Virus record (IMG/VR): IMGVR_UViG_3300045999_010033
Coordinates: 157,096-221,095 of that record
Strand: one strand, 5' to 3'
Length of the DNA: 64,000 nt
Below are positions 10,975-25,823 of this stretch, piece after piece. Both the position numbers and the translations under genes were made by a program. How positions within the stretch are numbered: the stretch's first letter is position 1; the number at the start of each line of letters is the position of its first letter. The notes under the pieces were generated by a model, which saw only the letters and a list, made by a program, of their open reading frames with translations, did not search any database and was not told where the DNA came from.

Positions 10975-12609
10975 TTAGAGAGTATGTAGACCCTCAACCA
11001 CAATCTTGCCATAGAATTCCGGACGGACTATCTTCTTAGCGTATCTCGTCATAACTCCACGACGTGGTGTGAAGTTAGTCGGGTCATACACAAGCGGAGT
11101 CATAATCAAAGGCACATATGGTGCGTAGACAGCTCCAGTTTCGAAGAAGTTAGAACCTTTGAAACCAAGAAGGATAACGTTCTCAGTCATGTATGGGTTT
11201 TTGTAAACATCATACCTGTTAGAGATTGAACCTACATTGGTTACACCAGCTGCAAATTGAAGAGCATCTTTACCAGGGTTAGCTGAGAAGCCATTCATTG
11301 ATTCGAGGATAGTACATACATCCGGGCTAGCCACGATGAAGTTTGCACCACCACGCATTGTCAACTGATGGATTTTGTTTGATACCTTTTGAAGTTTGAT
11401 ACCAAGTGTTTGATACCAAGTGTTCTTTTGGTAAGCGTTTGCAGATATAGTAGCAGAATCAGGTGCGAAAAGACCGGTTGTTGAATTGTAGTCGTATCCT
11501 ACTCTTGCAGACCAGTAATCAGTAGTCAATGCGTTAGCCTGAAGCATCTCAAGAATTTCCAAATCAATCTCAAGAGAGATGTATTCAGAAAGCATCTGAG
11601 TCAATTCAGCTTCTGCGTCGATACTGTGGTATGCGTTAAGGTCTTGCGCCAATTCAGGAGTCCAAACTGCTTTCAACTTACGAGTTTTAGCAACGATTGG
11701 TTCTGATTTGAGTTCAAGCTCAATTTCAGGAATACCAACATCAGCACCAGTTCTATCTTCAAAATCACCTCTTGAAGTAGCGGTTGGTTGTTTGTGATAA
11801 GATACTGTTGCAGTTGCACCATCGGAAAGGAATGCAGCAGTAGATCCAGTTACAAAGAATTCAACAAAGTTTCCGTTGATATTTGTGTATTGTGGATATA
11901 GTGTGACAGAGCCAGATGTAAGTACAAACGCTCTAACACCATTGAAATCCATTTCGGAAAGAATTGATGAAGATACTGCTACCTTCTTAATACCACCTGC
12001 TGCAACGGATGCTGAAAGTGCGTTTGAATAATCGGTATCTGCCCAAGATGCACTTGTTACAGTTACTCCTGCACCTATACTTCCTGTACCGATTGTTACA
12101 CTAACATCGTTGATGGAATATCCGAAACGACCAGGGCCATAAAGACCTTCTTCTGCTACTTGAGTAGAACCAAGTTTGTTACCTGCAGGTGAAAGAGAAT
12201 CTTTACCAACGGTACCACCTTTACCGAACATTGAAGAACCAGAGAATGCTGGCTTACCTGCTTGGTCGGTTGAATACTTGAAGTCCATGTAGAAGATAAG
12301 ACCTGAAGGTAAGTTCATCGGCTGTACAGAAACGAATTCTTTTGCAGCGATGCTACCAAAGATACGTCTTACAAGCGGAAGAGCTACACCTGCCCATTCT
12401 TCAGAACCAGCTGCGAAGCCAGTCTTTGTTGCTTCATCAAGAAGCTGCTTAGCTTGGTTTTCAAGCAATACTGCCATACCATGCTTTTGTGATTCAGAAC
12501 CTGCTCCTTCAAGAAGGCCTGTTTTTTCCCATTTGGATTTCAAACCCCTAGTTTGCTCAAGCATAATGCTTTGCGGGTTTGCACCATTCATTAATTTTTT
12601 TAAGTCCAT
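10975..12609 (-). CDS. Major capsid protein (T4 gp23-like), 544 aa
   Basis: AVLLENQ, VSVQPMNLPSGLIF, AKTRKLKAVWTPELAQDLNAYHSIDAEAEL, YAPYVPL, F.PRRGVMTRYA. Start reassigned to ATG at 12609 (MDLKKLM). Confidence 0.95.
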   Translation of the reverse strand: MDLKKLMNGANPQSIMLEQTRGLKSKWEKTGLLEGAGSESQKHGMAVLLENQAKQLLDEATKTGFAAGSEEWAGVALPLVRRIFGSIAAKEFVSVQPMNLPSGLIFYMDFKYSTDQAGKPAFSGSSMFGKGGTVGKDSLSPAGNKLGSTQVAEEGLYGPGRFGYSINDVSVTIGTGSIGAGVTVTSASWADTDYSNALSASVAAGGIKKVAVSSSILSEMDFNGVRAFVLTSGSVTLYPQYTNINGNFVEFFVTGSTAAFLSDGATATVSYHKQPTATSRGDFEDRTGADVGIPEIELELKSEPIVAKTRKLKAVWTPELAQDLNAYHSIDAEAELTQMLSEYISLEIDLEILEMLQANALTTDYWSARVGYDYNSTTGLFAPDSATISANAYQKNTWYQTLGIKLQKVSNKIHQLTMRGGANFIVASPDVCTILESMNGFSANPGKDALQFAAGVTNVGSISNRYDVYKNPYMTENVILLGFKGSNFFETGAVYAPYVPLIMTPLVYDPTNFTPRRGVMTRYAKKIVRPEFYGKIVVEGLHTL

Positions 12610-12628
12610 TTTGTTTTGTTTTGTTTTA

Positions 12629-14391: not shown

Positions 14392-14922
14392 TTATTTGAA
14401 ATATATTTCTTCAAAGTGAAGTATATCCAATAGGTTTGTTGGGTCTATTAATTGTGCCGCATTTAGAAGGTCTGAAAATTCTGTTATTGATTCGAATTGT
14501 CCTTTTCTAAATTCTTCTAGAAAATCAAACGTTGTAATATCTTTTTGCATAATCTCAACTGAATCCGCATTGTATTTTGTGAATAGGTCGTATTCCAATG
14601 CGTAAGATTTATTTACTATATCAATCAATCCTGTGAAATTAATGTTTGGTTTTACGGCCGGCATAGTTGGATTTATATTCCAATCTACAAGGTATTGTTG
14701 AAGTTTTTCGGCATGTCCCAATTCATTGGCTGCTTCTTTTTCAAAGAATGCTGCAGCATTGTTATATCCAACACCTTTGCACCAATTCGATGCAATACGA
14801 TAAAAGAAGTGTGCAGTATATTCATCTACCAATCTATCGTTGATAATCTTTACCGATGCTGGGTTAAGCTCTTTTGGATTTAGAGCCTTTGCCATTGTCA
14901 ATGCTTTGATATTTGTTGCCAT
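14392..14922 (-). CDS. Ferritin-like protein
   Basis: DEYTAHFFY...FFEKEAANELGHAEKLQQYL...ALE...GQFESITE matches non-haem ferritin ferroxidase-centre spacing. Start reassigned to MATNIK. Confidence 0.8.
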   Translation of the reverse strand: MATNIKALTMAKALNPKELNPASVKIINDRLVDEYTAHFFYRIASNWCKGVGYNNAAAFFEKEAANELGHAEKLQQYLVDWNINPTMPAVKPNINFTGLIDIVNKSYALEYDLFTKYNADSVEIMQKDITTFDFLEEFRKGQFESITEFSDLLNAAQLIDPTNLLDILHFEEIYFK

Positions 14923-14926
14923 AAAC

Positions 14927-15184
14927 TTAATGTAATTTTTGTTTTTCTCCTTTAATATAAGAAATAAATGCATTCATTGATGATGAATCTCTAAATACTA
15001 TTTGTTTCTTATCTTTATCGTAACTTTTTATATCTCTTTGAATTTGTGCCAACGCAGGATTTTGATACATTGTAGATAGTGTTTTCCATACTCTTTCCCA
15101 TACTTGCGGGTTTTGAATTGTTAGTGTACTATCGGTTGCCCCATCATTTGCGTTATAATCAAATTCTTCTTTTATTTTTTTTTT
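14927..15184 (-). CDS. Start-less 85-codon open frame (KKKIKEEFDYNAND...GEKQKLH*), the -1 frame continuation of the 15172-15588 gene
   Basis: Open from the A10 run (15175-15184) to TAA at 14927-14929, 4 nt before the ferritin ATG. No ATG/GTG/TTG between the upstream in-frame TGA and the run. Confidence 0.6.
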   Translation of the reverse strand, partial: KKKIKEEFDYNANDGATDSTLTIQNPQVWERVWKTLSTMYQNPALAQIQRDIKSYDKDKKQIVFRDSSSMNAFISYIKGEKQKLH

Positions 15185-15588
15185 AGTCCAAGCCTTTCTT
15201 GCATTTGCTCATGTGAAATATCGGCGATTTCAAAATATCTTCCGAGAACGTGTCCCATATCTTCATATAGGGCTTCAAGTCTTTGTTCTTGCTGATGTGC
15301 TATACTTGATTCTTTTTCAAACTTTTCTTGTAAGGATTTTAATTCTTTCATATTACGTTTGATAGTAACACGGTCAAACCAATCTCCACCCTCTCTCAAT
15401 GTGTATTCTTGTGCAGCATCTGCAATAGCACCAAGTGTTTCGGCAATTTGACGAATATCAGATTTACGATTAATACTTTCTCTATGTGTGCCGAATGTAG
15501 ATATTATTTCCAAAAAGTGTTTTTTAACTTCGGAAGGTAATTGTTGAAACTCTTCGGATTCTTTCAGTAAATCTTTTAATCGTATCAT
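15172..15588 (-). CDS. Putative internal head protein with MIRLKDLLKE leader
   Basis: ORF track; shared leader; ends CTA AAA AAA AAA TAA. Confidence 0.7.
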   Translation of the reverse strand: MIRLKDLLKESEEFQQLPSEVKKHFLEIISTFGTHRESINRKSDIRQIAETLGAIADAAQEYTLREGGDWFDRVTIKRNMKELKSLQEKFEKESSIAHQQEQRLEALYEDMGHVLGRYFEIADISHEQMQERLGLKKK

Positions 15589-15609
15589 TGTTTATATTTA
15601 ATATATTAA

Positions 15610-16164
15610 TTAAAACTCATCATTACCGTACGCCTTAATAAGTTGCATCAATCCATCGTAAGTTTTAGAAGAACCCTCTGGCTTATATTCACCATATCTA
15701 CTATTAAACTTTACTTTGACGGAATCTTTATCAGGATGACTTAACCAAACATTTTGTGTTGTATTTGATGTTTTTACAACAACTCCATTTTTATATTTTT
15801 TTGTATCAAACGCTTTCCACTCTCGGCCGGCTGGCTTTGGCTGTGATTTTGGTCTTTCAAATTTTTGGTATGGCTTATCACCCTTTCCGTACTCGCCGGC
15901 TGCAAATTTATTAACAAGATTATTTAAACCGGTTACATCACCACGATATCCATCTGCGTTTGCAGGAGTTCTCCATCTATCAGTTGCTGCTCCATCTTTT
16001 TTGAACTGCATAGTTCCATATTTTGGATGGCTTAAAGTTACATACTTATCGGCGGTTCTTACTGATACCCCATTTTTGAAATTTAATACACTTTCATTAA
16101 TGGTGGAGATTTTTTTAATCTCCTCACGAATTATTTGTCTTAATTGTGATACTGTGATTTTCAT
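15610..16164 (-). CDS. Putative internal head protein (MKITVSQLRQIIREE leader) with duplicated internal module
   Basis: FKNGVSVRT..YVTLSHP and YKNGVVVKTS..VWLSHP; GLNNLVNKFAAGEY and GLMQLIKAYGNDEF. Confidence 0.6.
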   Translation of the reverse strand: MKITVSQLRQIIREEIKKISTINESVLNFKNGVSVRTADKYVTLSHPKYGTMQFKKDGAATDRWRTPANADGYRGDVTGLNNLVNKFAAGEYGKGDKPYQKFERPKSQPKPAGREWKAFDTKKYKNGVVVKTSNTTQNVWLSHPDKDSVKVKFNSRYGEYKPEGSSKTYDGLMQLIKAYGNDEF

Positions 16165-16190
16165 TGTTTTTTTTTTTGATTAATAAAAAT

Positions 16191-16658
16191 TTATTTTTTA
16201 TGAGATTGGTATCCTTTATTTTTCATCCAATTAGTTAATGCGTATGGATTATCAATGCCCGGCTTATCTTTCATTGCTTTAACGGTTCCTTCCCATCCTT
16301 CGGGTGCCTTTTCGGAAATATTTTCTCCTCTAAATCCACTCATTCCATCTCCTTTCGTATTTCCTTGAAACCCAGCACCTACATCATTTTTTTTTTGACC
16401 GCCGAATGCATCTGCTTGCTTAATCTTTTGGATAGCCCTCATTACTTCTTGCTTATCCATATTAAGGCCATCAATTATTTTTGCAATTACAAGTACTTCT
16501 TTTTTACGAGGAAGATTGTAAGTTTTTAATTGAGATGTAAGTTTTTCTAAAAATCGGTTTACAGCCGTTGGAAGATTAACATCCAAATCATCAAGTGCTT
16601 CTTTTTGAATTGGTTTTTTATTTTCTTTTATAAGGCCTTTTAGTTTTATTGGTTTCAT
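16191..16658 (-). CDS. Putative internal head protein (IKLKGLIKE leader; C-terminal ISE|KAPEGWEGTVKAMK module)
   Basis: ORF track; leader and internal xxE sites. Confidence 0.6.
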   Translation of the reverse strand: MKPIKLKGLIKENKKPIQKEALDDLDVNLPTAVNRFLEKLTSQLKTYNLPRKKEVLVIAKIIDGLNMDKQEVMRAIQKIKQADAFGGQKKNDVGAGFQGNTKGDGMSGFRGENISEKAPEGWEGTVKAMKDKPGIDNPYALTNWMKNKGYQSHKK

Positions 16659-16678
16659 ATTTTTTGATTATTATTTTA

Positions 16679-16951
16679 TTAGTTAACAACTATATCCCAA
16701 TACTTAGAAGTTTCTTTTTTTGGCATTGATGTGTTTGTATATTTTGGACTAAGACTGTATATACGACGTCCTCCATTAATAGTACGAGAATATGTATAGT
16801 ATTTCGGATTTGGTAGATCATTTGTTCCATCAACTTCAAGTGGTAGCATGCCTCGTTTACGTCTTTGCCTATGTAGCGGATTATGCTTTTCGGCTTCATT
16901 CAGTTTTTGTATTCTATTAGGAATGAGTTTCATTAATTGCATGCTAATCAT
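16679..16951 (-). CDS. Small basic putative head protein (KLNE|A site)
   Basis: ORF 19 nt downstream of an ATATTTATA motif. Confidence 0.5.
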   Translation of the reverse strand: MISMQLMKLIPNRIQKLNEAEKHNPLHRQRRKRGMLPLEVDGTNDLPNPKYYTYSRTINGGRRIYSLSPKYTNTSMPKKETSKYWDIVVN

Positions 16952-16982
16952 TTTATTTTTCTTTATATAGTATAAATATACG

Positions 16983-17573
16983 TTAGTTCAATTCAACAAT
17001 TATTTCACGCATTAGGTCTTGTGCTTTACACCACTTACCACATTCGTCTGCAATTTTCTGCCATTGCTTACTCTCATTCATTGGTGCCATAAATGCTCCA
17101 TGCGTAGACGGGTTCGATACGAAGTCCCAGCCAACCAATTCGAAGTCGTCTTGCACCATTACCGTGCCATCCCTTTGCTCATTAACTGAACCAAGTCCAC
17201 GTGAACTAATACCAAGACGTATATTATTTTTAAGCAATTCTTTTAAGATATTGCCCGATGGTGTTGAAAGAATTTCTACCACTCCACAAACATCATCCCC
17301 TTCCCACCATATTTCACGAATATTGTGTGATACATTTTTAAGCTCGATTACTGGAGAATCCGGATGGTCTAATTCACCAAGTGCACGTCTTTCCTTAATC
17401 AATTGCTTATATTTTTCACACTCACGCTCTAATATCTCTTTTGGATAACGGCGATTGTTTTGATTGGGTGCACCTGCTCTTTGCAAAACGCCTTTAACAA
17501 GAAAAGTACCATTAGATTCTTCTTTGAGTTTTGCTTCGAATAGGTGGGTTTCTATTAATAGTTTTTTATTCAT
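16983..17573 (-). CDS. Prohead maturation protease (T4 gp21-like)
   Basis: NNRRYP, ALGELDHP, NVSH, LGISSRGLGS, DFVSNPST motifs. Confidence 0.93.
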   Translation of the reverse strand: MNKKLLIETHLFEAKLKEESNGTFLVKGVLQRAGAPNQNNRRYPKEILERECEKYKQLIKERRALGELDHPDSPVIELKNVSHNIREIWWEGDDVCGVVEILSTPSGNILKELLKNNIRLGISSRGLGSVNEQRDGTVMVQDDFELVGWDFVSNPSTHGAFMAPMNESKQWQKIADECGKWCKAQDLMREIIVELN

Positions 17574-17574
17574 T

Positions 17575-17769
17575 TTACATTCTTAATCTACCTTCAGACT
17601 TTGCTTGATATGCTTTGTCTACGGCATTAAAAAATTTCTTTTTTTCTTCGTCACTCATTGAGTTAATATCTTTCCCAGTTTTATCAAGCATAGTTTTGAA
17701 CAATTCTTGATAATCCTGCTCTTCTTTAATTACTTCTCTAACGAGTTCTTTTAGTTGTTGTAAGTTCAT
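17575..17769 (-). CDS. Small prohead core-like protein (64 aa)
   Basis: LKELVREVIKEE, MSDEEKKKFF; sits between portal and protease like T4 gp67/68. Confidence 0.55.
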   Translation of the reverse strand: MNLQQLKELVREVIKEEQDYQELFKTMLDKTGKDINSMSDEEKKKFFNAVDKAYQAKSEGRLRM

Positions 17770-17781
17770 TTTATTGTGGTT

Positions 17782-18192
17782 TTATTCTGATATTTTTCTA
17801 ATATGTTGTTCTAACTTAATCAACCTTTCTTTTATTTTCAAAATGTTTCCATTTGTACGTTTCCAAAATTGGTCATTAGATACTCCGTTTTCTTGCTTCA
17901 ATTTACCATACCAATTTAGAAATTTTTCCATTTCTGCCAATTGCTTATTGATGTTAGAAACGCCTTTACCGATTTTTCGGTGAGCAGGGATATCTTCATT
18001 TTTTAGTTCTAACCAACGATTTTCTTTTACAACGGTATACCCAGTTAGGTCAGCTTGTTGTTTCGCACTTTGCTTTGTATCTCCTCTTTTTTTGAATGCG
18101 TTTGGTGACTGGTATCCTTGAACGTTCCCTGTCACATTCATTTCTCTTACAACCTTTCTTATAAATTCTTTTAATTTACTTTTGTGTTGCAT
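17782..18192 (-). CDS. Hypothetical head-associated protein
   Basis: VVRE|MNVTGNVQGYQSPNAF and VKE|NRW sites. Confidence 0.55.
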   Translation of the reverse strand: MQHKSKLKEFIRKVVREMNVTGNVQGYQSPNAFKKRGDTKQSAKQQADLTGYTVVKENRWLELKNEDIPAHRKIGKGVSNINKQLAEMEKFLNWYGKLKQENGVSNDQFWKRTNGNILKIKERLIKLEQHIRKISE

Positions 18193-19048
18193 TTTTCAAT
18201 TCTTTTATTAGTTCGTATGCCATCATAAGCGCGGATACGTGTTGCTCTTTAACACGTTTATTCTGCTTTATTTTTTTTATCTGCCCTATCGTTTCTACTA
18301 ATTTTATTTTTGTAACTTTATCGGTAATCTTCTTTCCAATTTCATTTAGGGATTGTGTAATTTTATTTACTTCACTTTGAATGTGATTTGAAAAGCCGGA
18401 ACTATTAGTCATTCCATTAATATATTCTCGTAGTAAAACCTTTTGCTCATTACTTAGGTCTTTATACTTTGTATTAAAACTTTCTATTAAAATTTTATAC
18501 GAAAGAGCCCTTACAGTTTCATCTTGTTTTTTGAATTGTTCCAATACGGCATCTTTTATTTTTGCATCTTTATTCTGTATTGATTTATTTATTATGTTTT
18601 CTGCAATTGTAAATCTTGAAGATACCACATCGGTTGGATCTAAAATTTCGGATTCATTTATTGATTCAAAAATTTTATAAATTGATGCAAGAACTTTGTA
18701 GTTTGAAACCGATGATTTTAATAAATCTTCTATATTATACGATTCTCTTATTTTTTTTACTAAATTATATTTTTCTTTTGTCAATTTAGCTTCATCAAGA
18801 CGTTTGCGTGCTTCACAAACGGTATCAATAAACTTTTCTGCTTTTGCTTCAGAATTATATTTTTCGTTTATAAGATACTGATATAATTTTAATTCTTTTG
18901 AAAGTTCTTTTTTAGAATTAAAAAATTCTTGTAGGATTTTTTCTGCTTTAGATTTATTTTCCGACATAATTTCGGAGGTGATTTGTCTAAGCAGTAATTC
19001 AAAAATGAATCCTGTATTTTTGAACTTAGAATGTTTAATTTTTTTCAT
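18176..19048 (-). CDS. Hypothetical helical protein downstream of portal
   Basis: ATG 19048 MKKIKHSKFKNTGFIFELL; preceded by ATATTTATA motif. Confidence 0.65.
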   Translation of the reverse strand: MKKIKHSKFKNTGFIFELLLRQITSEIMSENKSKAEKILQEFFNSKKELSKELKLYQYLINEKYNSEAKAEKFIDTVCEARKRLDEAKLTKEKYNLVKKIRESYNIEDLLKSSVSNYKVLASIYKIFESINESEILDPTDVVSSRFTIAENIINKSIQNKDAKIKDAVLEQFKKQDETVRALSYKILIESFNTKYKDLSNEQKVLLREYINGMTNSSGFSNHIQSEVNKITQSLNEIGKKITDKVTKIKLVETIGQIKKIKQNKRVKEQHVSALMMAYELIKELKNATQK

Positions 19049-19087
19049 CAAAGGGATAATTTATCTCTTTATAAATATATTTATTGA

Positions 19088-20836
19088 TTATTTAACAGCA
19101 GATTTGGTATCTGTTAGTATTATTTTTTTACCACCAAGCATATCTTTGTATATTTCTTTATAACTTACTTTACGTGGTTTGTATTTTACAGAACCTTCTT
19201 TTTGTTTTAGAGTTTTAATCCCAAGTGGGTCGCGACCAAGTGGATGATCATCTTTACCATATCTAACCGGGTCTTTTGGTCTTCCAACTTTTCCTTCTTC
19301 TTCTAATTCATCTTTAATTTTTTGAATTTCTTCTTCAACATTGGTTGGTTCTTCTGTTCCGGTTTCTTTAGCAGGATCAGTTCCTTGTGTTTCAATTTGT
19401 GTCAATCTGAACGCTTGCTTTGTATCTTCCAATACATCAATTGTCATGTCATCTTGTTCATCTTGCGCAAATTTCATAATATTTTCATACATCCACTTTT
19501 TAGAAAACAATTTTGTTTGTTGCATAGATTGTATAAGAGATACCTTTGATGTATATAATTCTATTTGCTCTTGCTCATATATTTTTGATGGAATAGTAAG
19601 TTCTAATTGAAAATCCAAATCTGCCGCGTTATCCATACCCTGCGCATATAAATGAACTATTGCTATCTTTGTCAATTCGGAAATAAGAACTTTTTGTATT
19701 CTTTCGATGGTTTTGGCGAACCTTACATCTTGCGCTGCCAATGTTGCTTTTCCGTTTACATCTTCTTCATATCCCAAATGTGATTTTGGAATTTTAAGAG
19801 CTGCGAACATTTTTCCTTTTAGGTAGTTGATATCATCTATTGCCTGATATTCCATGCCCTTCAAAGTATCTATGCTCGTACCACTATCGCTACCGCGGAC
19901 AGGAAGATAATAATCCTCAATAATATTTTGAATATTATATTTAAGATTGTAATCTCCGGTTTTTTCATCTACAAATGGTGTTTTTTTACTGCTGTTAATG
20001 ATTCGTTGCATATAATTATCAACTTCAGTTGGTGGTATATTACCAACATCAACTTTGAATATACGTTTTTCGGGAGCACGCATAATACGATGTATTAACA
20101 TAGCATCCTCCATAAGAGTTAGTTGTTTCCAAACCCGTCTTGCACCTTCTATCATTGATTTTCCATAAGGAAGAAAATTAGAATCAGAATGCATTCTGAA
20201 ATGCGCAATTTCATAATTTTCATATTCTTTTTTATTAGAAGCAGAAGACCCTCCGTATGGGTTTGTGTATGGTGCATATACAAACTTTACACGTTGTGGA
20301 TTTTCTATATCAAAGTTTTCAACACGTGTAACTTCATATACCGATATGGGAATTACATTAACAATTCCAAGTTCAGGTGCTACTTCTAATTGTAAAAAGA
20401 AATCACCATACTTTACCAAGTTTCTTGTCCAAGGCCAAAGTGTGAATTCTATGTTTACAATATCATAAAATAAGTTATGAAGAATTTGTTTTACATTTTC
20501 ATCTGAACAATGTATTTTCAGTACATCTCCATGTTCATTTTTTGTTGTACTTTCATCTGCGTAAATATCTAATGCCGCAGCAAGAATAGGGTCATGATCC
20601 ATTGAATCATAATCTCTAAATAGGTCAGCACGAACTTGCTGATACGACATTGCCGATTCCAACATTCCACCACTATATTGTGGGGTCTTCAATTTCATAA
20701 AACGGTCTACAAGGTTAGTCGTCATTGATTGATATTCATCAGTATCAATGACCCTTACGCCCTTTTTAGTTCTACGAATAATTGTGTTTGTAGAAAATAG
20801 TTTTTGTAACCTTCCAAAAATGGTTTTATCTGCCAT
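19088..20836 (-). CDS. Portal protein (T4 gp20-like)
   Basis: QLTLMEDAMLIHRIMRAPEKRIFKVDVGNIP, EDYYLPVRG..GTSIDTLKG, ALKIPKS. Confidence 0.93.
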   Translation of the reverse strand: MADKTIFGRLQKLFSTNTIIRRTKKGVRVIDTDEYQSMTTNLVDRFMKLKTPQYSGGMLESAMSYQQVRADLFRDYDSMDHDPILAAALDIYADESTTKNEHGDVLKIHCSDENVKQILHNLFYDIVNIEFTLWPWTRNLVKYGDFFLQLEVAPELGIVNVIPISVYEVTRVENFDIENPQRVKFVYAPYTNPYGGSSASNKKEYENYEIAHFRMHSDSNFLPYGKSMIEGARRVWKQLTLMEDAMLIHRIMRAPEKRIFKVDVGNIPPTEVDNYMQRIINSSKKTPFVDEKTGDYNLKYNIQNIIEDYYLPVRGSDSGTSIDTLKGMEYQAIDDINYLKGKMFAALKIPKSHLGYEEDVNGKATLAAQDVRFAKTIERIQKVLISELTKIAIVHLYAQGMDNAADLDFQLELTIPSKIYEQEQIELYTSKVSLIQSMQQTKLFSKKWMYENIMKFAQDEQDDMTIDVLEDTKQAFRLTQIETQGTDPAKETGTEEPTNVEEEIQKIKDELEEEGKVGRPKDPVRYGKDDHPLGRDPLGIKTLKQKEGSVKYKPRKVSYKEIYKDMLGGKKIILTDTKSAVK

Positions 20837-20865
20837 AGTTAATCTTTATTATATATATACTATTT

Positions 20866-21975
20866 TTACCACTTTCTGCATGACCAGTAACGCGCTTTCC
20901 ATCTTGGGCCAGGATTATCACAGTTGTGTCTAGCTCTGAATGATTTGCGTCTTTCAGGATTTGATTTTTTAATACGCATATTTGGGTCTCCGAAGTTTAC
21001 TTTAACAACGTTACCTTTATCATTTTTAACGTACACTTTAAATTTTTTAACATCACCCTGCATTGGTTTGCCGAGCTTTACTTTTCTACCCTGATATTCT
21101 GCTTCAAAAACGCAACCGCATCCTGCTTCATTTAGTGTTCGGTTATATTCTCTCATAAAGACAATAAAGTCTTTGTAGTCATCATAGTTTTCAACATCGT
21201 ATTCTACGGGTTGAACTCTTCCGTAATTAATTTCGGAATCTTTATCTCTACGTTCGGGATGATCTGGATATTCTTCTTTCATAGCTTTTTGTTTTGATAT
21301 TTCGATAGCAGCCAATTGTTTTTGCGCTGCAGATTTACTTGAATGTGTTCCTAATCGGTCTCCACCTTTCTTTGGATATACTGCGTACTTATCTCCTACT
21401 TTCTTAATAGTTTCTTTAACCGGCTCATATCCTTTTCTCTGATTATCTTTTGTATCGGATTGATATCCTGGCTCTACTTCTCTATCATCATCAAAATCAT
21501 ATGTATCTAATTCGGCAGGATATCCATAATCGGGTGTATATGAAGAACTCTTATGATGATGCAAAAAATTACCATCACCGGTCCCATGTGGTATGTGATT
21601 GCGGGAGTTAATTGCTTCAGAAACCGGTACACAATTTGGAACTTCTTTACCATTTTTGTCTTTCATTCCAACTTGCTTATATCCATCCCAGCATGGCCCT
21701 TCCAATAACTCATCATCATCTTTATCTAATGGATTTTCGACTGGAATACGTCCACTTGGCTGTACCCATCCACCTGCGGAAGGGTCGTATCCTTCATTAC
21801 AAGTACGCCATCCACCACCCTTTGATTTATAGTTTTTTGCAGCCCATCCATTTGCATATGCACTTGGGTAAACATCAAATTTACGTTTTGCCGCAGCCTT
21901 TGATGCTGACCATTTTGCTGGGTCAGTCGGGCAATTCTTTTCTAAAAATAATTCTAATCTTTCTTCTATTGTCAT
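20866..21975 (-). CDS. Modular polyprotein-like head protein (alternating basic and acidic modules)
   Basis: Modules YPSAYANGW, GPCWDGYKQVGMK..VPNCVP, IKKVGDKYAV..LGTH, and FGDPNM..RRKSFRARHNC..RYWSC, separated by xxE sites. Confidence 0.7.
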   Translation of the reverse strand: MTIEERLELFLEKNCPTDPAKWSASKAAAKRKFDVYPSAYANGWAAKNYKSKGGGWRTCNEGYDPSAGGWVQPSGRIPVENPLDKDDDELLEGPCWDGYKQVGMKDKNGKEVPNCVPVSEAINSRNHIPHGTGDGNFLHHHKSSSYTPDYGYPAELDTYDFDDDREVEPGYQSDTKDNQRKGYEPVKETIKKVGDKYAVYPKKGGDRLGTHSSKSAAQKQLAAIEISKQKAMKEEYPDHPERRDKDSEINYGRVQPVEYDVENYDDYKDFIVFMREYNRTLNEAGCGCVFEAEYQGRKVKLGKPMQGDVKKFKVYVKNDKGNVVKVNFGDPNMRIKKSNPERRKSFRARHNCDNPGPRWKARYWSCRKW

Positions 21976-21976
21976 T

Positions 21977-22618
21977 TTAGTTTACGGATTTAGATTTAGT
22001 ATCACGACCCGCCTGTCGGGCTTTTCTACCTGCACAGTGTGCTTTTTGGCTGAATCCTTTGGGGTTATCGCAATCAATTGATTTTTTGTAGCCTTTTGTC
22101 CATTTTTCATTTAGTCGGTTTTCGTGCTTTATGATTAACTCACCCAATACTTCTATTAGTCCGACCAATCTTTGAAACCCGATTTGGTCCATTTGAACTT
22201 TACCACCACATATTTCTTCCATATAACCATTAAATTCTTCACGAGCATCTTCTAAATTAAAACCGCCTTCGGCTGCTTTTTTATAGTGTGGAAGTTTTAC
22301 AACAAAATGATGATAGGTAAGAATTGCTACTCCACCCTTTTCTTTTGCATCTTTAGTTATTTTAGTAGCACCTTCTAATCTTTTCTTTGCAAAATCTTCA
22401 AAACTTTCTATTTTTGGAGAGTTTGATTTAACTAGATTTGCGGAAGTTTTTTTCTTTTCATCACCATAGGATTTACCCATAGCCTGCCCAGCGGTAGTTT
22501 CTCTTCCAGCTATCGTCACTTTTGTAGATGGACGTATATCATGCTGCTTTGCATAAGCATCAAATTCGGCTTGAGATTTAAATTCTAATTCGTTCAATAT
22601 ATCTTTAAGTCTAATCAT
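21977..22618 (-). CDS. Putative internal head protein (MIRLKDILNE leader; C-terminal LNE|KWTKGYKKSIDCDNPKGFSQKAHC module)
   Basis: Start reassigned to ATG 22618. Confidence 0.65.
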   Translation of the reverse strand: MIRLKDILNELEFKSQAEFDAYAKQHDIRPSTKVTIAGRETTAGQAMGKSYGDEKKKTSANLVKSNSPKIESFEDFAKKRLEGATKITKDAKEKGGVAILTYHHFVVKLPHYKKAAEGGFNLEDAREEFNGYMEEICGGKVQMDQIGFQRLVGLIEVLGELIIKHENRLNEKWTKGYKKSIDCDNPKGFSQKAHCAGRKARQAGRDTKSKSVN

Positions 22619-22619
22619 T

Positions 22620-22859
22620 TTATTTAATGGCTTTACCAAACTCTTGTGAAAAGTCCGTATCTTGTGATAAATCAATTGTTTGAACTCGGCACTTTTTACA
22701 TTCGTGTTTTTGTGTAAGTATTTCTATTACTTGTTTAGCTTCACTCATTGATTTAGCTTTTGTAAAAAGTATTTGTTCATCCTTTTTGCCAGGAGGAACA
22801 CCCCAAATAATATATTCAGTTTTAGTGGTTTCTTTTAATATATCTTTAAGTCTAATCAT
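22620..22859 (-). CDS. Putative internal head protein (MIRLKDILKE leader)
   Basis: First 23 nt identical to those of the 22618 gene. Confidence 0.65.
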   Translation of the reverse strand: MIRLKDILKETTKTEYIIWGVPPGKKDEQILFTKAKSMSEAKQVIEILTQKHECKKCRVQTIDLSQDTDFSQEFGKAIK

Positions 22860-23200
22860 GTCGGCGGATTATATTTTTTATCACTTCCCTTTTTATCCCA
22901 ACTAACTCTTACTGGCTTTTTACCTTTACTGCCATCACCTTTATCGCCACGTCCTGCTTTGTTTTGTTTTGCACGTTTACGTCTTACGAAACTTGCTCTA
23001 CCTTTTTTTCCAAGCTTTTTTGCCGCTGCCGATGAAAGACATGCCGCATATGCTTCACCTTCTTCGCCGGCTCCACACTTTCCAACACGTTTACCACTGG
23101 AATCATATCTATCCCAGCCACCACCTCCTTTACCTCCCCATTTGCCCTTTCCGAACCACTTACGGAGGTCTTCGTCTAAAAGGTCAAATAGTTTAATCAT
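22856..23200 (-). CDS. Basic Gly/Lys-rich putative internal head protein (MIKLFDLLDE leader)
   Basis: DLRKWFGKG...KCG...ACL...FVRRKR; very basic after the leader. Confidence 0.65.
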   Translation of the reverse strand: MIKLFDLLDEDLRKWFGKGKWGGKGGGGWDRYDSSGKRVGKCGAGEEGEAYAACLSSAAAKKLGKKGRASFVRRKRAKQNKAGRGDKGDGSKGKKPVRVSWDKKGSDKKYNPPT

Positions 23201-23523
23201 TAGAATACGGAATTGATTTGAGATGAAACCTCTTTACCATACTTTGATTGACATTGTTTCATCAATTCATTATAGATATTTGTTCTCAAATCTATAAGCT
23301 CTTTTGGAGTATGTCCAAACTCTTTCTGCATATCCAACATACTATTCAAAATGTTTTCAAATGCTCCCATTTTCATAAATTTGGCGAACTCAAGTACCGC
23401 TTCGGTATGCGCATTTCTATCGGTTAATTTTTCTATCTTTTTAACGATAGGGTCTACATTGATCGCTTCTTTTAATCCGGTAACTACCTTTGTTTCTGAT
23501 AGTATATTAGTTAGTTTAATCAT
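23200..23523 (-). CDS. Putative internal head protein (MIKLTNILSE leader)
   Basis: Leader plus a second LKE|A site; first gene after an ATATTTATA motif. Confidence 0.65.
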   Translation of the reverse strand: MIKLTNILSETKVVTGLKEAINVDPIVKKIEKLTDRNAHTEAVLEFAKFMKMGAFENILNSMLDMQKEFGHTPKELIDLRTNIYNELMKQCQSKYGKEVSSQINSVF

Positions 23524-23562
23524 GCTATTTTATTTTAAGTGTTTCAATCTATAAATATACAA

Positions 23563-25167
23563 TTATCCTAATAACCATCTTATATCTTCAATCTCTCCGT
23601 TATTTCCATAAGAAATTTCATATGGGTTATTTTGTAAGTGGTTTTTAGTATAAACACTTTCGTATTGTTGTATTTTAGCCGAACTTAACATAGACTTTGT
23701 AAGGTCTACTCCTTCATTTCTAAGCCTCAATGCAGTATTTCTAACCCACAGTCCTATCGCCATAGCCATTGTCAAGTCATCGTTGTAGCCCTTCATTGCT
23801 TCCGCTCTACCATTAAACCAAATAAATGTAAATAATTCTTCTATCATACGAGAAGACCGTATTAATATCTCTTTTTCTCTAAGATACGTATCTAATGCAG
23901 AAATAATAAGTGGTCGCGTCCTTTGTGTTACCGAAAATCCAGCAACCATCTTGCGTTCCTCACGATAATATTTGTTGGTCATTTGCCTTTCTACATCAAT
24001 GTATTTCAAGTCATTACTCATGTAAAATAGATTACCATATCCACGATTAATGATTTGTTGTATGGCGGCCCAACCTACGTTTGAGTTTTCCACAACTAAT
24101 AGGGCATTATTGTATTCGGTAGCAAGTGAAACTAATAGGTTTCCAAAATCTTTTGTATTGATTTTACCACGATATTCTGCAACTTGTGAGCAATTATCTA
24201 AATCTATAACTTGTGCAGTTGAAAAGTCATTTGAATCACCACGTGAAACGTCCGCAGCAACCATATAGTTTCTTGTATAATCCGGATGTTCCCATCTCCA
24301 TAGGTTTCCATCGAAACCAGTTTTTTCAATTGGATCGATTACCCAAGTTTGCTTATACCACATTAGAAGTTGTGGGTCTATCACAGTATCACCGGAACTT
24401 ACAAAATCACAATCACACTCTTGCGCAGCTCCTTTTACACCAAGAACACGTGTTTGATCATCTCTCCACGTTTGATTTCTTTCAGGGTGCTCTGTCCAAT
24501 GAAGCATTATATTATTGAATCCATTTATTCCACTTTCTCCATCTACCCACATTTTATGAAACCAATTACCAACACCATTTGGAGTTGATAGTACAATAGC
24601 AGAACCACCAGTTGAAAGTGTAGATTGCGCCGATAGCCAAATTTCATCAATATCTCTAATGAACGCTGCCTCATCAATTACAAGCAATGATAGGGCTTCA
24701 GAACGTCCTGCATCAGGAGATGATGTGATTGCTTTAACTTGCGAACCATTTTTTAGTTTAAGAGATAATTTATTATCTTCAACTGATGCGGATGAGCCAT
24801 CTCTCAACCAAATTGGCAAAAGATCGTGCATCACTCTTACTTTTTCTACAAGGTTTTTTGCAACTGTTACTTTTGTAGCAATAACAAGTGCGTTAAAATC
24901 CGCATTGAATATCATTTTCCATAAAATAAATCCTGCGGATAACGTGGATAATCCAAGTTGTCTACTCTTTAAAATTATATTATAACGATTATCTTTAAAA
25001 TCAGTAATACATTTTTCTTGAAATGGAAAAAGGTGAAATGGAATTTTACCACGAGTAGGGTGCTGAATGACACAATACTTTTTCATAAAGTATATTGGGT
25101 CTAATGCACATTTTTTATACTCATCGGCAATTAGGTCTTTCAGGCTTCTATTTGGATTTATTGGCAT
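23563..25167 (-). CDS. terL: Terminase large subunit (T4 gp17-like)
   Basis: LFPFQ Q-motif, KSRQLGLST Walker A, LLVIDEAAF Walker B, LSTPNG, nuclease DVSRG..DFS and DDLTMA. Confidence 0.95.
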   Translation of the reverse strand: MPINPNRSLKDLIADEYKKCALDPIYFMKKYCVIQHPTRGKIPFHLFPFQEKCITDFKDNRYNIILKSRQLGLSTLSAGFILWKMIFNADFNALVIATKVTVAKNLVEKVRVMHDLLPIWLRDGSSASVEDNKLSLKLKNGSQVKAITSSPDAGRSEALSLLVIDEAAFIRDIDEIWLSAQSTLSTGGSAIVLSTPNGVGNWFHKMWVDGESGINGFNNIMLHWTEHPERNQTWRDDQTRVLGVKGAAQECDCDFVSSGDTVIDPQLLMWYKQTWVIDPIEKTGFDGNLWRWEHPDYTRNYMVAADVSRGDSNDFSTAQVIDLDNCSQVAEYRGKINTKDFGNLLVSLATEYNNALLVVENSNVGWAAIQQIINRGYGNLFYMSNDLKYIDVERQMTNKYYREERKMVAGFSVTQRTRPLIISALDTYLREKEILIRSSRMIEELFTFIWFNGRAEAMKGYNDDLTMAMAIGLWVRNTALRLRNEGVDLTKSMLSSAKIQQYESVYTKNHLQNNPYEISYGNNGEIEDIRWLLG

Positions 25168-25823
25168 TATTTTTTCAATTTTATTTTCCAGTAAACTGAA
25201 CCATTTACATATGGTGTGATTGTAGAGCCATTTTGTAATCCAACACCTAATCCAAATATTTTATTTTTTGGAGTTTGGTACATTAGACTTAATCCAATCG
25301 TATTTGGTAATTGGTTTTTTGTAAATCCACCATTTATTCCGAAATACAAAGTTGAAGTTGGTACCGGAGTTAACCACGTTGTATCGTGAATTTCTTTTTG
25401 ATTGATATTAGATAAATATGTTCTATACCAAATACGATTTTCTTTTATAGTATCAGTTAAAGTTACATATCCCAATGAATCTTTTAATTCAAGTGTATCA
25501 ATAGAAACTTTCTTTGCAAAATAGTCTTTAAGAATTTCTGCGGTATCCACATTTTCATATTGAACCGCAGTATCGTATTCAACTATAAATGTGTATATTT
25601 GTTCTTTACTACGATATTCAGTAAAACGATTTGGAATGTATTTAGTACTTGTTGTTTTTTTATTTACTTTATAAAGTTCTCCATCAATTACAACCGTATT
25701 TGATTTATCATATTTAGATTGTTGACATTGCATAAATGTCAAAAAAATTAAGAATATAACAAGTAATACTCCTTTCCAATCGAGTAGTGATTTGAAATTA
25801 AAATTTAACGATGAGTTCGGCAT
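25167..25823 (-). CDS. Hypothetical membrane-anchored protein
   Basis: N-terminal hydrophobic segment (GVLLVIFLIFLTFMQC); beta-rich C-terminus. Confidence 0.55.
   Translation of the reverse strand: MPNSSLNFNFKSLLDWKGVLLVIFLIFLTFMQCQQSKYDKSNTVVIDGELYKVNKKTTSTKYIPNRFTEYRSKEQIYTFIVEYDTAVQYENVDTAEILKDYFAKKVSIDTLELKDSLGYVTLTDTIKENRIWYRTYLSNINQKEIHDTTWLTPVPTSTLYFGINGGFTKNQLPNTIGLSLMYQTPKNKIFGLGVGLQNGSTITPYVNGSVYWKIKLKK

What the first reader, a model, noticed from the sequence alone, without database searches (positions are those of the whole stretch)
20866..21975. Bead-on-string polyprotein: basic mini-domains alternating with acidic spacers, each bounded by xxE
Seen: candidate sites are FLE12, CNE61, LLE92, VSE120, VKE188, MKE234, LNE283 and VFE291. 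Segments 13-61, 189-234 and 292-369 are Lys/Arg-rich, and 93-120 is a Lys-containing Cys-pair module. Segments 62-92, 121-188 and 235-283 are Asp/Glu-rich. Similar basic modules sit after xxE sites in neighbours (LNE|KWTKGYKKSIDC..., LDE|DLRKWFG..., ISE|KAPEGW...). Inference: a self-neutralised precursor that the prohead protease cuts into several small basic peptides (DNA-condensing or injected effectors), with the acidic spacers discarded.
Basis: partly seen in the sequence, partly recalled or inferred. Interest (0 to 1): 0.75.

Follow-up and report, generated by a model that had tools for sequence, protein, structure and literature searches.

The report
Modular head-cargo polyprotein of marine phage
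This gene of a 221-kb T4-like marine phage strings together several small basic domains found in many aquatic viruses, and each is preceded by the cutting motif of the phage's head protease, so it is probably cut up inside the capsid and packed with the DNA, which suggests a testable role for the long-unexplained Tlr6F-like viral domain.

Summary
The ORF lies on the minus strand (20866-21975, 369 aa).

An AlphaFold model shows five confident "beads" separated by disordered acidic spacers. Hydrophobic-x-E sites lie within 3 residues of 7 of the 9 bead edges (P=5e-5).

The gene sits between the large terminase and a T4-type portal, about 3.3 kb from a T4-type (S77) prohead protease. Nine nearby genes start with 10-17-residue leaders such as MIRLKDILxE, which have the geometry of the T4 capsid-targeting sequence.

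Orthologues gain, lose or swap whole modules exactly at the xxE borders. The same modules occur shuffled in thousands of proteins.

The C-terminal Tlr6F-like (DUF5754-like) domain starts directly at Met in nine cultured viruses that lack S77. In four cultured S77-encoding phage groups and the window it carries an acidic extension ending in [LIVMF]-x-E. Among 50 IMG/VR records, all 10 with S77 were of the [LIVMF]-x-E class and none of the 17 other records had it.

A module-bearing cyanophage protein is annotated as a virion protein.

I rate this a new variant of the T4 internal-protein system.

The parts
21940..21975 (-). Residues 1-12 (MTIEERLELFLE): N-terminal leader or propeptide ending in F-L-E|K. 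The same 12-residue stretch precedes module A wherever A occurs, including at internal positions.
   Evidence: [LIVMF]-x-E directly precedes module A in 80 of 81 unique instances. The model gives a helix at 3-11 with lower confidence.
21793..21939 (-). Residues 13-61: module A, a DUF5872-like basic helical mini-domain (+7) with the invariant FDVYPSAYANGW motif.
   Evidence: pLDDT 83-94. Pfam PF19197 scores below its cut-off for P0001 (20.2 bits against 27.5) but above it for orthologue P0161 (33.6 bits). AFDB structural hits are to DUF5872 proteins. It stands alone in phage DSL-LC04. An intein splits the motif in P0164.
21700..21792 (-). Residues 62-92: acidic spacer 1 (-6), disordered, ending in L-L-E|G.
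   Evidence: pLDDT below 50 over 68-92. Its length varies from 7 to about 80 residues among orthologues, yet [L/I]-x-E before module B is kept in all of them.
21616..21699 (-). Residues 93-120: module B, a Cys-pair beta-hairpin (CW..GY...G.K.K.GK.VPNCVP), ending in V-S-E|A.
   Evidence: pLDDT 70-85, strands 99-107 and 110-117. C95 and C115 are invariant. It matches phrog_9737. In other proteins it follows a 10-residue leader directly, e.g. P0016 MIKLIDLLSE|GKPCW.
21412..21615 (-). Residues 121-188: acidic spacer 2 (-7), disordered, ending in V-K-E|T.
   Evidence: pLDDT 34-45. It is deleted exactly in P0157 and replaced exactly by about 230 other residues in P0156.
21274..21411 (-). Residues 189-234: module C, basic (+7), a small beta unit plus a helix (KKVGDKYAVYPKKGG...).
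   Evidence: pLDDT 76-87. It matches phrog_3684. It lies at the N-terminus of P0027 and P0148 and is absent from several orthologues.
21103..21273 (-). Residues 235-291: acidic pro-region of module D (net -8). It contains a helix at 264-283 and ends with two sites, L-N-E283|A and V-F-E291|A, which flank the octapeptide AGCGCVFE.
   Evidence: L281, E283 and E291 are invariant in orthologues. Acidic pro-regions of 20-60 residues ending in [LIVMF]-x-E precede D in most short D proteins.
20869..21102 (-). Residues 292-369: module D, a Tlr6F-like (DUF5754-like) basic domain (+17) made of a small beta-barrel and two helices. The stop codon is at 20866-20868.
   Evidence: pLDDT 81-90. It matches phrog_7595. 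PF19058 is the top Pfam family for 7 of 10 family members but always below its cut-off. One Atlas cluster carries PF19058. Stand-alone versions start with Met immediately before the residue equivalent to A292.
16983..17573 (-). T4 gp21-type prohead serine protease (Peptidase_S77), the proposed processing enzyme. It has its own L-I-E8 near the N-terminus.
   Evidence: PF03420 E=3e-29 and phrog_207 E=5e-54. Sequence. The T4 gp21 motif L/I-X-E and its own LIE-9 are described in PMC9026906.
19088..20836 (-). T4-type portal (gp20) directly downstream of the ORF.
   Evidence: PF07230 E=4.6e-72.
23563..25167 (-). Large terminase, upstream border of the variable cargo locus.
   Evidence: phrog_2 and PF03237.
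21977..23523 (-). Four tandem small genes: 23200-23523, 22856-23200, 22620-22859 and 21977-22618. Each starts with a 10-residue leader M-I-(K/R)-L-x-(D/N)-(I/L)-L-x-E. Two of them carry basic modules (DLRKWFG... and KWTKGYKKSIDC...PKGFSQ) that are fused to the P0001 orthologue in related phages.
15172..18192 (-). Five more leader-bearing genes around the protease: 17782-18192, 17575-17769, 16191-16658, 15610-16164 and 15172-15588. Their leaders are of the type ..LK.LIRE| or MIRLKDLLKE|.
   Evidence: Nine of the ten such leaders in the 221-kb genome lie within window 15172-23523.
10975..12609 (-). T4 gp23-type major capsid protein. Three L-x-E motifs (LLE34, LLE50, LDE59|A) lie upstream of the part that aligns with mature T4 gp23*.
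   Evidence: phrog_138. Alignment to PDB gp23* chains.

Best explanation
P0001 is a capsid-internal cargo precursor of a T4-like marine myophage.

Proposed mechanism, by analogy with T4:
1. The precursor is taken into the prohead core through its N-terminal leader and/or its acidic pro-regions.
2. The gp21-type S77 protease cuts after [L/I/V/F/M]-x-Glu at the module borders. The well-supported sites are E12, E92, E120, E188, E283 and E291.
3. This releases small, folded, basic domains: A (DUF5872-like), the B hairpin, C, and above all the +17 Tlr6F-like domain D.
4. The acidic, disordered spacers act as charge-neutralising pro-regions and leave the head as peptides.
5. The basic domains stay with the packaged DNA and probably enter the host with it.

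Shown: the bead-and-spacer architecture; conservation of the motif exactly at module borders; module gain and loss at those borders; the head-gene context; the family of leaders with T4 CTS geometry; and co-occurrence of the junction motif with S77.

Inferred: capsid targeting, actual cleavage, the fate of the spacers, and DNA association or ejection.
For: 1. Context. The gene lies between TerL and a T4-type portal, with an S77 protease about 3.3 kb downstream. The same synteny holds for orthologues in L004 and L005.

2. Leaders. Ten ORFs in the 221-kb genome start with MIxLxDILxE or ..LKxLIRE leaders, and nine of them lie within 8.4 kb around the portal and protease. The geometry is hydrophobic at positions 4, 7 and 8 and Glu at 10. 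This matches what PMC9026906 reports for the 10-residue T4 capsid-targeting sequence: targeting by residues 4 and 7, processing by residues 8 and 10, and gp21 motif L/I-X-E.

3. Structure. The model has confident beads at 12-62, 93-122, 188-235, 263-283 and 290-369, with pLDDT below 50 over 68-92, 124-186 and 282-286. Seven of the nine bead edges carry a hydrophobic-x-E site (P=5e-5).

4. Conservation at borders. [LIVMF]-x-E directly precedes module A in 80 of 81 unique instances, module D in 170 of 182, and module B in 93 of 143. The background rate is 0.029 per position. The motif is invariant at 12, 92, 283 and 291 in orthologues while the spacers vary.

5. The motif lies outside the domain and tracks the protease.
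- D begins at Met plus Ala in HTVC111P, 112P, 202P, 026P, Kolga, CRP-901, CRP-902 and two Nitrosopumilaceae spindle viruses.
- D has an acidic extension ending in [LIVMF]-x-E in HTVC008M, C48C1, immuto and Melnitz.
- PF03420 is present in exactly the latter group, and also in S-BM3 and S-RIM8. It is absent from every former genome that was tested and from DSL-LC04.
- In IMG/VR, 10 of 33 records of the [LIVMF]-x-E class carry S77, against 0 of 17 records with other junctions (P=0.009). Among records at least 59% complete the split is 5 of 5 against 0 of 4.

6. Experimental hint from a relative. S-SCSM1 ORF29 carries a DLxKWF-type module, an A variant, module B (FNE|DCWDGY) and DUF6321 (VSE|GAAWTKK). 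It is annotated 'virion protein' in a genome whose paper reports a mass-spectrometry virion proteome. The virion-detected NMNAT ORF91 starts MKSFLQFLKE|, which is CTS-like.

7. Many metagenomic relatives have a 10-residue leader fused directly to a module. Seventeen percent of unique N-termini fit a CTS-like pattern, against 2.4% of internal Met windows.
Against: - There is no direct evidence that P0001 or any homologue is cleaved, or that P0001 itself is in virions.
- P0001's own leader has F rather than L/I at P3 and lacks the hydrophobic P7 of its neighbours' leaders.
- CNE61 and MKE234 do not fit the motif. If they are not cut, A keeps an acidic tail (net +1) and C keeps its acidic partner (net 0).
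- The modules also sit in non-structural regions. Melnitz gp18 lies next to primase and helicase. The abundant short D proteins lie among UvdE, SNase and lipase genes. T4 ip genes are also outside the head cluster, but this rests on my own knowledge, not on a tool result.
- The S77 association rests on few independent lineages and has no phylogenetic correction. Most IMG/VR negatives are fragments.
- The conserved leader before A could simply be a structural helix.
- The protease-substrate complex prediction gave no answer.
- DNA binding rests only on charge, on fusion partners and on non-significant fold similarity.
Confidence: 0.55

Rival explanations
1. A head-internal protein that loses only its N-terminal leader, like T4 IPI-III. 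The internal [LIVMF]-x-E motifs are then relics of leaders from once-separate mini-genes that became fused, and the mature protein stays as one multi-domain chain with acidic linkers.
For: The modules are separate leader-bearing genes in this window but are fused in relatives. An internal Met is often kept at the old start, e.g. ...KKNE-M-KIEEKL. The neighbouring genes are packed with 0-4 nt between or overlapping, so fusion is easy. T4 internal proteins lose only 10-19 N-terminal residues.
Against: A relic would not stay invariant at four internal borders while the adjacent spacers change freely in length and sequence. It would also not be kept in 170 of 182 D junctions. T4 core proteins gp22 and gp67, and phiKZ-type inner-body proteins, are cut at several sites. 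The sites lie in disordered, accessible segments.
Confidence: 0.25
2. An uncleaved cytoplasmic protein, not packaged. It would be a chain of small nucleic-acid- or ligand-binding domains acting in the infected cell, and the Glu-containing junctions would merely be part of the acidic linkers.
For: The modules occur in viruses without head proteases and in early or replication regions. They are fused to enzymes such as cytidylyltransferase, ParB/Srx and peptidoglycan-binding proteins. PgVV Tlr6f was at most marginally detected in virions.
Against: The gene sits between TerL and the portal in all three loci seen. The leader family has T4 CTS geometry. The junction motif is specific to S77 genomes. 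A relative's module protein and the NMNAT are annotated or reported as virion proteins.
Confidence: 0.13
3. A chance pattern. Glu-rich linkers next to hydrophobic residues could give xxE by composition alone.
For: The protein has 27 Glu. 'xxE' with a free P3 is uninformative. The count of hydrophobic-x-E is only modestly above shuffles (P=0.019).
Against: Placement at bead edges has P=5e-5. The motif is invariant across orthologues. It appears in 80 of 81 and 170 of 182 junctions in homologues against a background of 0.029 per position.
Confidence: 0.02

Closest known systems
T4 internal proteins IPI, IPII, IPIII and Alt (capsid-targeting sequence plus gp21 processing)
   Same: There is a short N-terminal leader ending in hydrophobic-x-Glu and a T4-type S77 protease in the genome. 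The cargo is basic. The cargo locus is hypervariable while the leaders are conserved.
   Different: T4 internal proteins are single cargos that lose only the leader. Here several mini-domains are chained, with acidic spacers and internal sites. The cargos are domains shared with podoviruses, siphoviruses, archaeal spindle viruses and (for Tlr6F and DUF5872) giant viruses and polinton-like viruses.
T4 core proteins gp22, gp67 and gp68, and phiKZ / 201phi2-1 / SPN3US inner-body and ejection proteins
   Same: The prohead protease cuts after Glu at several sites, and propeptides are removed from the head (PMC9026906).
   Different: Those proteins are scaffold or large inner-body proteins. The phiKZ motif is S/A-x-E. 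They are not chains of autonomous basic mini-domains with acidic pro-spacers.
Tlr6F / DUF5754 (PF19058), the 'ubiquitous yet uncharacterised' small protein of polinton-like viruses, virophages, giant viruses and some phages
   Same: Module D is a small, basic domain found across many viruses. PF19058 is its best Pfam match. The literature is in PMC4642659, PMC12220804 and bioRxiv 10.1101/2022.07.28.501842.
   Different: All scores are below the Pfam cut-off (12.4 bits against 27.4; best E among relatives 0.0014). In eukaryotic viruses it is a stand-alone gene. Here it is the C-terminal bead of a precursor with a protease-type junction.
Polyvalent proteins of phages and conjugative elements (Iyer et al. 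2017, PMC5512222)
   Same: These are multi-domain polypeptides predicted to travel with the DNA and to be processed into separate units.
   Different: Polyvalent proteins are large, combine enzymatic domains and are typically processed by zincin-like peptidases. P0001 has no recognisable enzyme domain and would be cut by the head protease.
Adenovirus core protein precursors pVII and pre-Mu (from my own knowledge, not tested here)
   Same: Precursors of very basic DNA-associated core proteins are matured inside the capsid by the viral protease.
   Different: The virus realm, the protease (adenain, a cysteine protease) and the sequences are unrelated. This is an analogy only.

Membership tests
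T4-type capsid-targeted, gp21-processed head proteins | The genome encodes a gp21-type (Peptidase_S77) prohead protease. | tested here: met
   PF03420 E=3e-29 at 16983-17573.
T4-type capsid-targeted, gp21-processed head proteins | An N-terminal propeptide of about 10-19 residues ending in L/I-x-E. | tested here: inconclusive
   P0001 has the 12-residue MTIEERLELFLE| with P3 = F; homologues have L, F or I there. Nine neighbouring genes fit the T4 geometry cleanly.
T4-type capsid-targeted, gp21-processed head proteins | The protein, or its fragments, is physically present in proheads or virions and is cut after Glu. | not testable with these tools
   Only indirect evidence: S-SCSM1 ORF29, which carries these modules, is annotated 'virion protein'.
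Tlr6F / DUF5754 (PF19058) | A score above the Pfam gathering threshold (27.4 bits). | tested here: not met
   11.2-12.4 bits for P0001. Seven of ten D modules hit it as the top family, with best E 0.0014. I therefore call the domain Tlr6F-like, not a proven member.
DUF5872 (PF19197) | A score above the Pfam gathering threshold (27.5 bits). | tested here: inconclusive
   P0001 scores 15.6-20.2 bits, below the cut-off. Orthologue P0161 scores 33.6 bits, but its best-scoring stretch is on its N-terminal DLNKWF-type module (residues 4-62, profile positions 55-106), not on module A. Many homologues carry a precomputed PF19197 hit. AFDB fold hits are to DUF5872 proteins at E=1e-5.
Polyvalent proteins (Iyer 2017) | Disparate enzymatic domains in one chain, typically with a zincin-like or other processing peptidase domain. 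| tested here: not met
   No enzymatic Pfam or NCBIfam domain was found in P0001.
phiKZ-type inner-body proteins | S/A-x-E cleavage motif and a phiKZ-like protease (gp175 type). | tested here: not met
   P3 is hydrophobic (L/I/V/F/M), not S or A. The protease is S77 and T4-like, although S80 also gives a weak hit.

The most novel reading that the evidence does not exclude
The Tlr6F-like (DUF5754) and DUF5872 mini-domains, conserved from tailed phages and archaeal spindle viruses to polinton-like and giant viruses, may be generic genome-associated virion core proteins: small basic domains packed with the DNA. T4-like phages would then have adapted them to their own packaging route by adding acidic pro-regions and prohead-protease sites, sometimes chaining several into one polyprotein. 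That would give the long-uncharacterised Tlr6F its first function.
Probability: 0.3. Interest if true: 0.8.

Novelty: new variant of a known kind. Interest (0 to 1): 0.62.

Why it matters
T4's capsid-targeting and processing logic is textbook, but it is known almost only from T4 itself and from phiKZ-like phages. If this reading is right, it would show four things.

1. A distant marine T4-like lineage, related to Flavobacterium phage immuto and Microcystis phage Mel-JY01, runs a large and plastic set of leader-tagged head cargos.
2. Cargos can be chained into a self-neutralised polyprotein whose beads are exchanged at protease sites.
3. The cargos are domains that are extremely abundant in ocean viromes (7,439 cluster representatives), and one of them is Tlr6F-like. 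Tlr6F is a core gene of polinton-like viruses and has had no known function since its description (PMC4642659).
4. The puzzling detection of NMNAT-like enzymes in cyanophage virions (PMC9602691) has a simple explanation: they carry a T4-like targeting leader.

All four points can be tested directly with existing cultured phages.

Tried and rejected
- Plus-strand reading of the coordinates gives only stops. The gene is on the minus strand.
- NCBIfam gave nothing useful for P0001 or for stand-alone D proteins. I could not reproduce the 'HVA1 family protein' label on CRP-901 gp67.
- Foldseek against the PDB with the full model gave no match at E<=0.001. The weak PWWP, SH3 and OB-like hits are not evidence.
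- BFVD and AFDB searches returned only uncharacterised relatives and fusion partners.
- The complex prediction of the S77 protease with residues 268-304 gave no answer (score 0.01), which is neither for nor against.
- A near-identity DNA search of 19000-25200 against cultured phages gave no match.
- The supplement of the S-SCSM1 paper held as text does not list which ORFs were detected by mass spectrometry. Virion status of ORF29 therefore rests on its GenBank product name plus the paper's statement.
- The exact capsid-protein maturation site could not be fixed. Three L-x-E candidates lie upstream of the region that aligns with gp23*.
- I considered a zinc site formed by C286/C288 with H350/C352/C366. 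The C-x-C is present in only a minority of D junctions, so it is not essential to D.
- I considered a disulfide- or metal-stapled secreted peptide (RiPP- or bacteriocin-like precursor). I rejected it because of the head-gene context, the absence of any signal peptide or modification enzyme nearby, and the association with S77.
Full report
**1. What is there**

The ORF is on the minus strand, 20866..21975, and encodes 369 aa (P0001). The plus strand is closed.

'xxE' by itself is weak, because the protein has 27 Glu. With P3 restricted to L/I/V/M/F there are 9 sites against 4.45 in shuffles (P=0.019). Seven of the nine edges of the folded beads have such a site within 3 residues (P=5e-5). I read the bead edges from the model output myself, so that figure is approximate.

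**2. Beads on a string**

I built an AlphaFold2 model on a 116-sequence alignment (A2). It has confident modules at 12-62 (helical, pLDDT 83-94), 93-122 (beta-hairpin), 188-235 (small beta unit plus helix), 263-283 (helix) and 290-369 (small barrel plus two helices, 81-90). Residues 68-92, 124-186 and 282-286 fall below pLDDT 50. The acidic segments are therefore predicted to be disordered linkers.

PHROG hits are also module-wise: 23-50, 79-123, 177-261 and 292-369 match four different families.

**3. Context**

The window is the last 64 kb of a 221,095-bp viral record. All genes here are on the minus strand. Their order is: large terminase (23563-25167), four small ORFs, P0001, T4-type portal (19088-20836), three ORFs, T4 gp21-type S77 prohead protease (16983-17573), further small ORFs, a very acidic scaffold-like protein, and a gp23-type capsid protein.

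The nearest cultured relatives by portal are Microcystis phage Mel-JY01 (49%) and Flavobacterium phage immuto (47%). Orthologues of P0001 on two other contigs sit in the same place, between terminase and portal, with S77 about 4 kb further on.

**4. A family of leaders**

Four genes upstream of P0001 and five around the protease begin with 10-17-residue leaders: MIRLKDILNE, MIRLKDILKE, MIKLFDLLDE, MIKLTNILSE, MIRLKDLLKE, and ..LKELVRE....LRQIIRE..LKGLIKE types. In the whole 221-kb genome only ten ORFs start this way, and nine lie within window 15172-23523. Related contigs carry still more of them.

The 10-residue version has hydrophobic residues at positions 4, 7 and 8 and Glu at 10. For the T4 capsid-targeting sequence, PMC9026906 reports that residues 4 and 7 serve targeting and residues 8 and 10 serve processing, that gp21 cuts after L/I-X-E, and that T4 propeptides are 10-19 residues long. 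The window protease even keeps an L-I-E near its own N-terminus, like T4 gp21's LIE-9.

P0001's own leader (MTIEERLELFLE) is a looser fit: P3 is F and P4 is L, but there is no hydrophobic P7.

**5. The modules are autonomous and mobile**

An exhaustive HMMER search found 7,439 cluster representatives. In the best 150, modules A (about 1-62), B (91-121), C (189-235) and D (289-369, often with 257-288) occur in different orders, numbers and partners. Examples are D-B-A, D-D and D-A-C, and D at the end of 160-900-aa proteins.

Cultured phages carry single modules: pelagiphage podoviruses, siphoviruses and myoviruses, roseophages, cyanomyoviruses, Methylophilales phage Melnitz, immuto, and two Nitrosopumilaceae spindle-shaped viruses.

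Fusion partners include cytidylyltransferase/NMNAT-like enzymes with DUF5824, peptidoglycan-binding domains, an XkdF-type protein, ChaB and ParB/Srx.

Module A is DUF5872-like and module D is DUF5754/Tlr6F-like. For D the Pfam scores are always below threshold, so I call it Tlr6F-like rather than a member. The literature describes Tlr6F as conserved in nearly all polinton-like viruses, several virophages, many giant viruses and some phages, and as having no known function (PMC4642659, PMC12220804). In the PgVV virophage only a few sub-threshold peptides were seen in particles.

**6. Do module borders in homologues coincide with the xxE sites?**

Yes.

In ten full-length orthologues, E12, E61, E92, E283 and E291 are invariant and E120 nearly so. 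P3 is hydrophobic at 12, 92, 283 and 291 throughout, while the spacers between them change in length from a handful to about 80 residues.

- P0157 lacks exactly residues 121-188 (…VSE|TIKK…).
- P0156 replaces exactly that stretch with about 230 unrelated residues between ISE| and FNE|.
- Other orthologues lack module C.
- Others carry one or two additional N-terminal modules joined at …NE| junctions.

Those extra modules (DLxKWF… and KWSxKYK…PKGFSQ) are separate leader-bearing neighbour genes in this window. The locus therefore evolves by splitting and fusing leader-plus-module cassettes.

Over all unique flanks in my sample, [LIVMF]-x-E directly precedes A in 80 of 81 cases, D in 170 of 182 and B in 93 of 143. 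The background rate is 0.029 per position. The sample is biased towards relatives of P0001.

**7. Is the motif part of the domain or a protease feature?**

Stand-alone D proteins in viruses that are not T4-like start with Met followed at once by the residue equivalent to A292 (MAKYKGR…, MAIYRGR…, MATYKGK…). This holds in HTVC111P, 112P, 202P, 026P, Kolga, CRP-901, CRP-902 and two spindle viruses. The motif therefore lies outside the fold.

In T4-like phages D always has an acidic N-terminal extension ending in the motif: HTVC008M …LEE|AEF, C48C1 …LTE|AEY, immuto …LDE|GEY (with an MIRLQEIVG leader), Melnitz …MME|SEY.

A search for PF03420 found S77 in HTVC008M, immuto, C48C1, Melnitz, S-BM3 and S-RIM8. 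It found none in HTVC111P, 112P, 202P, Kolga, CRP-901, CRP-902, either spindle virus, or DSL-LC04. DSL-LC04's stand-alone module A likewise lacks the leader.

In IMG/VR, 63 of the 80 best D loci have the motif and 17 have another junction. Of 50 records searched, 10 carry S77, and all 10 are of the motif class (10 of 33 against 0 of 17, P=0.009). Among records at least 59% complete the split is 5 of 5 against 0 of 4.

These counts are not phylogenetically independent, and most negatives are fragments. Still, the direction is uniform.

Short D proteins that are very abundant in ocean metagenomes show the same plan. They have a leader that is often MK.FKEF(I/L).E, then a 20-60-residue acidic or Cys-rich pro-region, then …(M/L/V/I)-x-E|AEYQGR. 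The minimal form is MFE|AEYQGR.

**8. Experimental hints from the literature**

The T4-like cyanophage S-SCSM1 has a published mass-spectrometry virion proteome of 45 proteins, 13 of unknown function. It includes an NMNAT, and the authors note that NMNAT-like proteins recur in cyanophage virions (PMC9602691).

- ORF29 is annotated 'virion protein'. It is a 517-aa chain with a DLxKWF-type module (VSE|GTLHKWF), an A variant, module B (FNE|DCWDGY) and DUF6321 (VSE|GAAWTKK).
- The NMNAT ORF91 starts MKSFLQFLKE|A, a CTS-like decapeptide.
- Melnitz gp18, an NMNAT-like enzyme followed by B, DUF5824 and D, starts MKKFSEIIE|A.

I could not confirm ORF29's detection from the supplement text.

**9. Mechanism I consider most likely (confidence about 0.55)**

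P0001 is a head-cargo precursor. It is taken into the prohead core. The S77 protease cuts after hydrophobic-x-Glu at E12, E92, E120, E188, E283 and E291; four of these six sites have G or A at P1'.

The expected products are:
- A with or without its acidic tail;
- the 28-residue B hairpin;
- C, possibly still joined to 235-283;
- an octapeptide (284-291);
- the 78-residue, +17 domain D.

The acidic, disordered spacers would neutralise the basic domains before maturation and then leave the head, as T4 propeptides do. The basic domains would stay with the DNA.

D is extremely conserved across phages of unrelated hosts (90% identity or more in many proteins). That argues for a universal ligand such as nucleic acid rather than a host-specific target. 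This last step is inference.

The rivals are removal of the leader only (0.25), an uncleaved cytoplasmic protein (0.13) and chance (0.02).

**10. Comparison and novelty**

The logic is that of T4 internal proteins and core proteins, and of phiKZ-type multi-site processing. It also recalls the polyvalent proteins of Iyer et al. (PMC5512222) and, by analogy only, the adenovirus core-protein precursors.

What is different here:
- autonomous viral mini-domains are chained together;
- the acidic pro-spacers sit between them;
- beads are exchanged at protease sites;
- the cargos are DUF5872-like and Tlr6F-like domains.

My literature searches found no description of capsid-targeting leaders in marine T4-like phages and no function for Tlr6F. 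I rate this a new variant of a known kind, with interest 0.62.

**11. What led nowhere**

Fold searches against the PDB, the NCBIfam scans and the protease-substrate complex prediction gave nothing usable.

Noticed in passing
Homologues P0164 and P0165 (metagenomic; not in the window): An intein (PF14890, below its cut-off; Cys at +1 and ...GN|S at the end) of about 240 residues is inserted in module A, between FDVYP and SAYANGW. That is the most invariant motif of the DUF5872-like domain, which suggests a functionally critical site.
   Followed up: partly
window 21977-23523 compared with L004:9702-11050 and L005:9388-11846: The stretch between terminase and portal is a plastic cargo locus. 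It holds four leader-bearing genes plus P0001 here, one plus a fused orthologue in L004, and two plus the orthologue plus one in L005. The modules DLRKWFG... and KWTKGYKKSIDC... are separate genes here and are fused to the orthologue elsewhere.
   Followed up: partly
G000:C1:2217-3044 (outside the window, minus strand): This is the only leader-bearing ORF (MIRLKDLLSE..., 275 aa) outside the head cluster. It lies at the other end of the linear record, which may be adjacent to the window's end if the genome is circularly permuted.
   Followed up: no
window 14392-14973 (minus strand): A ferritin-like protein sits inside the head-gene block. Its L005 homologue carries PF00210, and here it matches phrog_16594.
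   Followed up: no
window 12629-13777 and 10975-12678 (minus strand): A 382-aa extremely Asp/Glu-rich protein, probably the scaffold, lies just upstream of the capsid gene. The mechanical capsid ORF (start at 12678) overlaps it, and the real capsid start is more likely the Met at 12609 (MDLKKL...).
   Followed up: partly
S-SCSM1 ORF91 (L029:20-1249) and Melnitz gp18 (L003:4990-6942): NMNAT/cytidylyltransferase-like enzymes of T4-like marine phages begin with decapeptides resembling the T4 targeting sequence (MKSFLQFLKE|, MKKFSEIIE|). This would explain why such enzymes keep turning up in cyanophage virion proteomes.
   Followed up: partly
IMG/VR loci L049, L076, L086, L092, L104, L108: A second class of D fusions exists. 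A module KYKDPKTGE.YEYERKGIYKK.GR.LV is joined to D without any Glu junction, in 95-150-kb phage records that lack an S77 protease (one of them is 100% complete).
   Followed up: partly
P0001 residues 84-127 (window 21595-21726): Module B aligns structurally with a 47-aa AFDB entry named 'SSU ribosomal protein S31P' (43% identity, E=7.6e-3). This is a lead only and may reflect a misannotation.
   Followed up: no
window 3-6830, 26505-30800, 30872-34813, 34860-38003, 42793-48135 (minus strand): There are five very large ORFs (2276+, 1431, 1313, 1047 and 1780 aa). The first two gave GC-rich stretches in the composition profile. I did not examine them.
   Followed up: no
BFVD hits A0A6J5T6Y7 and A0A6J5R8N4: Module D occurs fused to proteins named 'PBSX protein XkdF', which from my own knowledge is a family of putative prohead proteases. 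This may be independent support for a capsid-internal location. The names come from automatic annotation.
   Followed up: no
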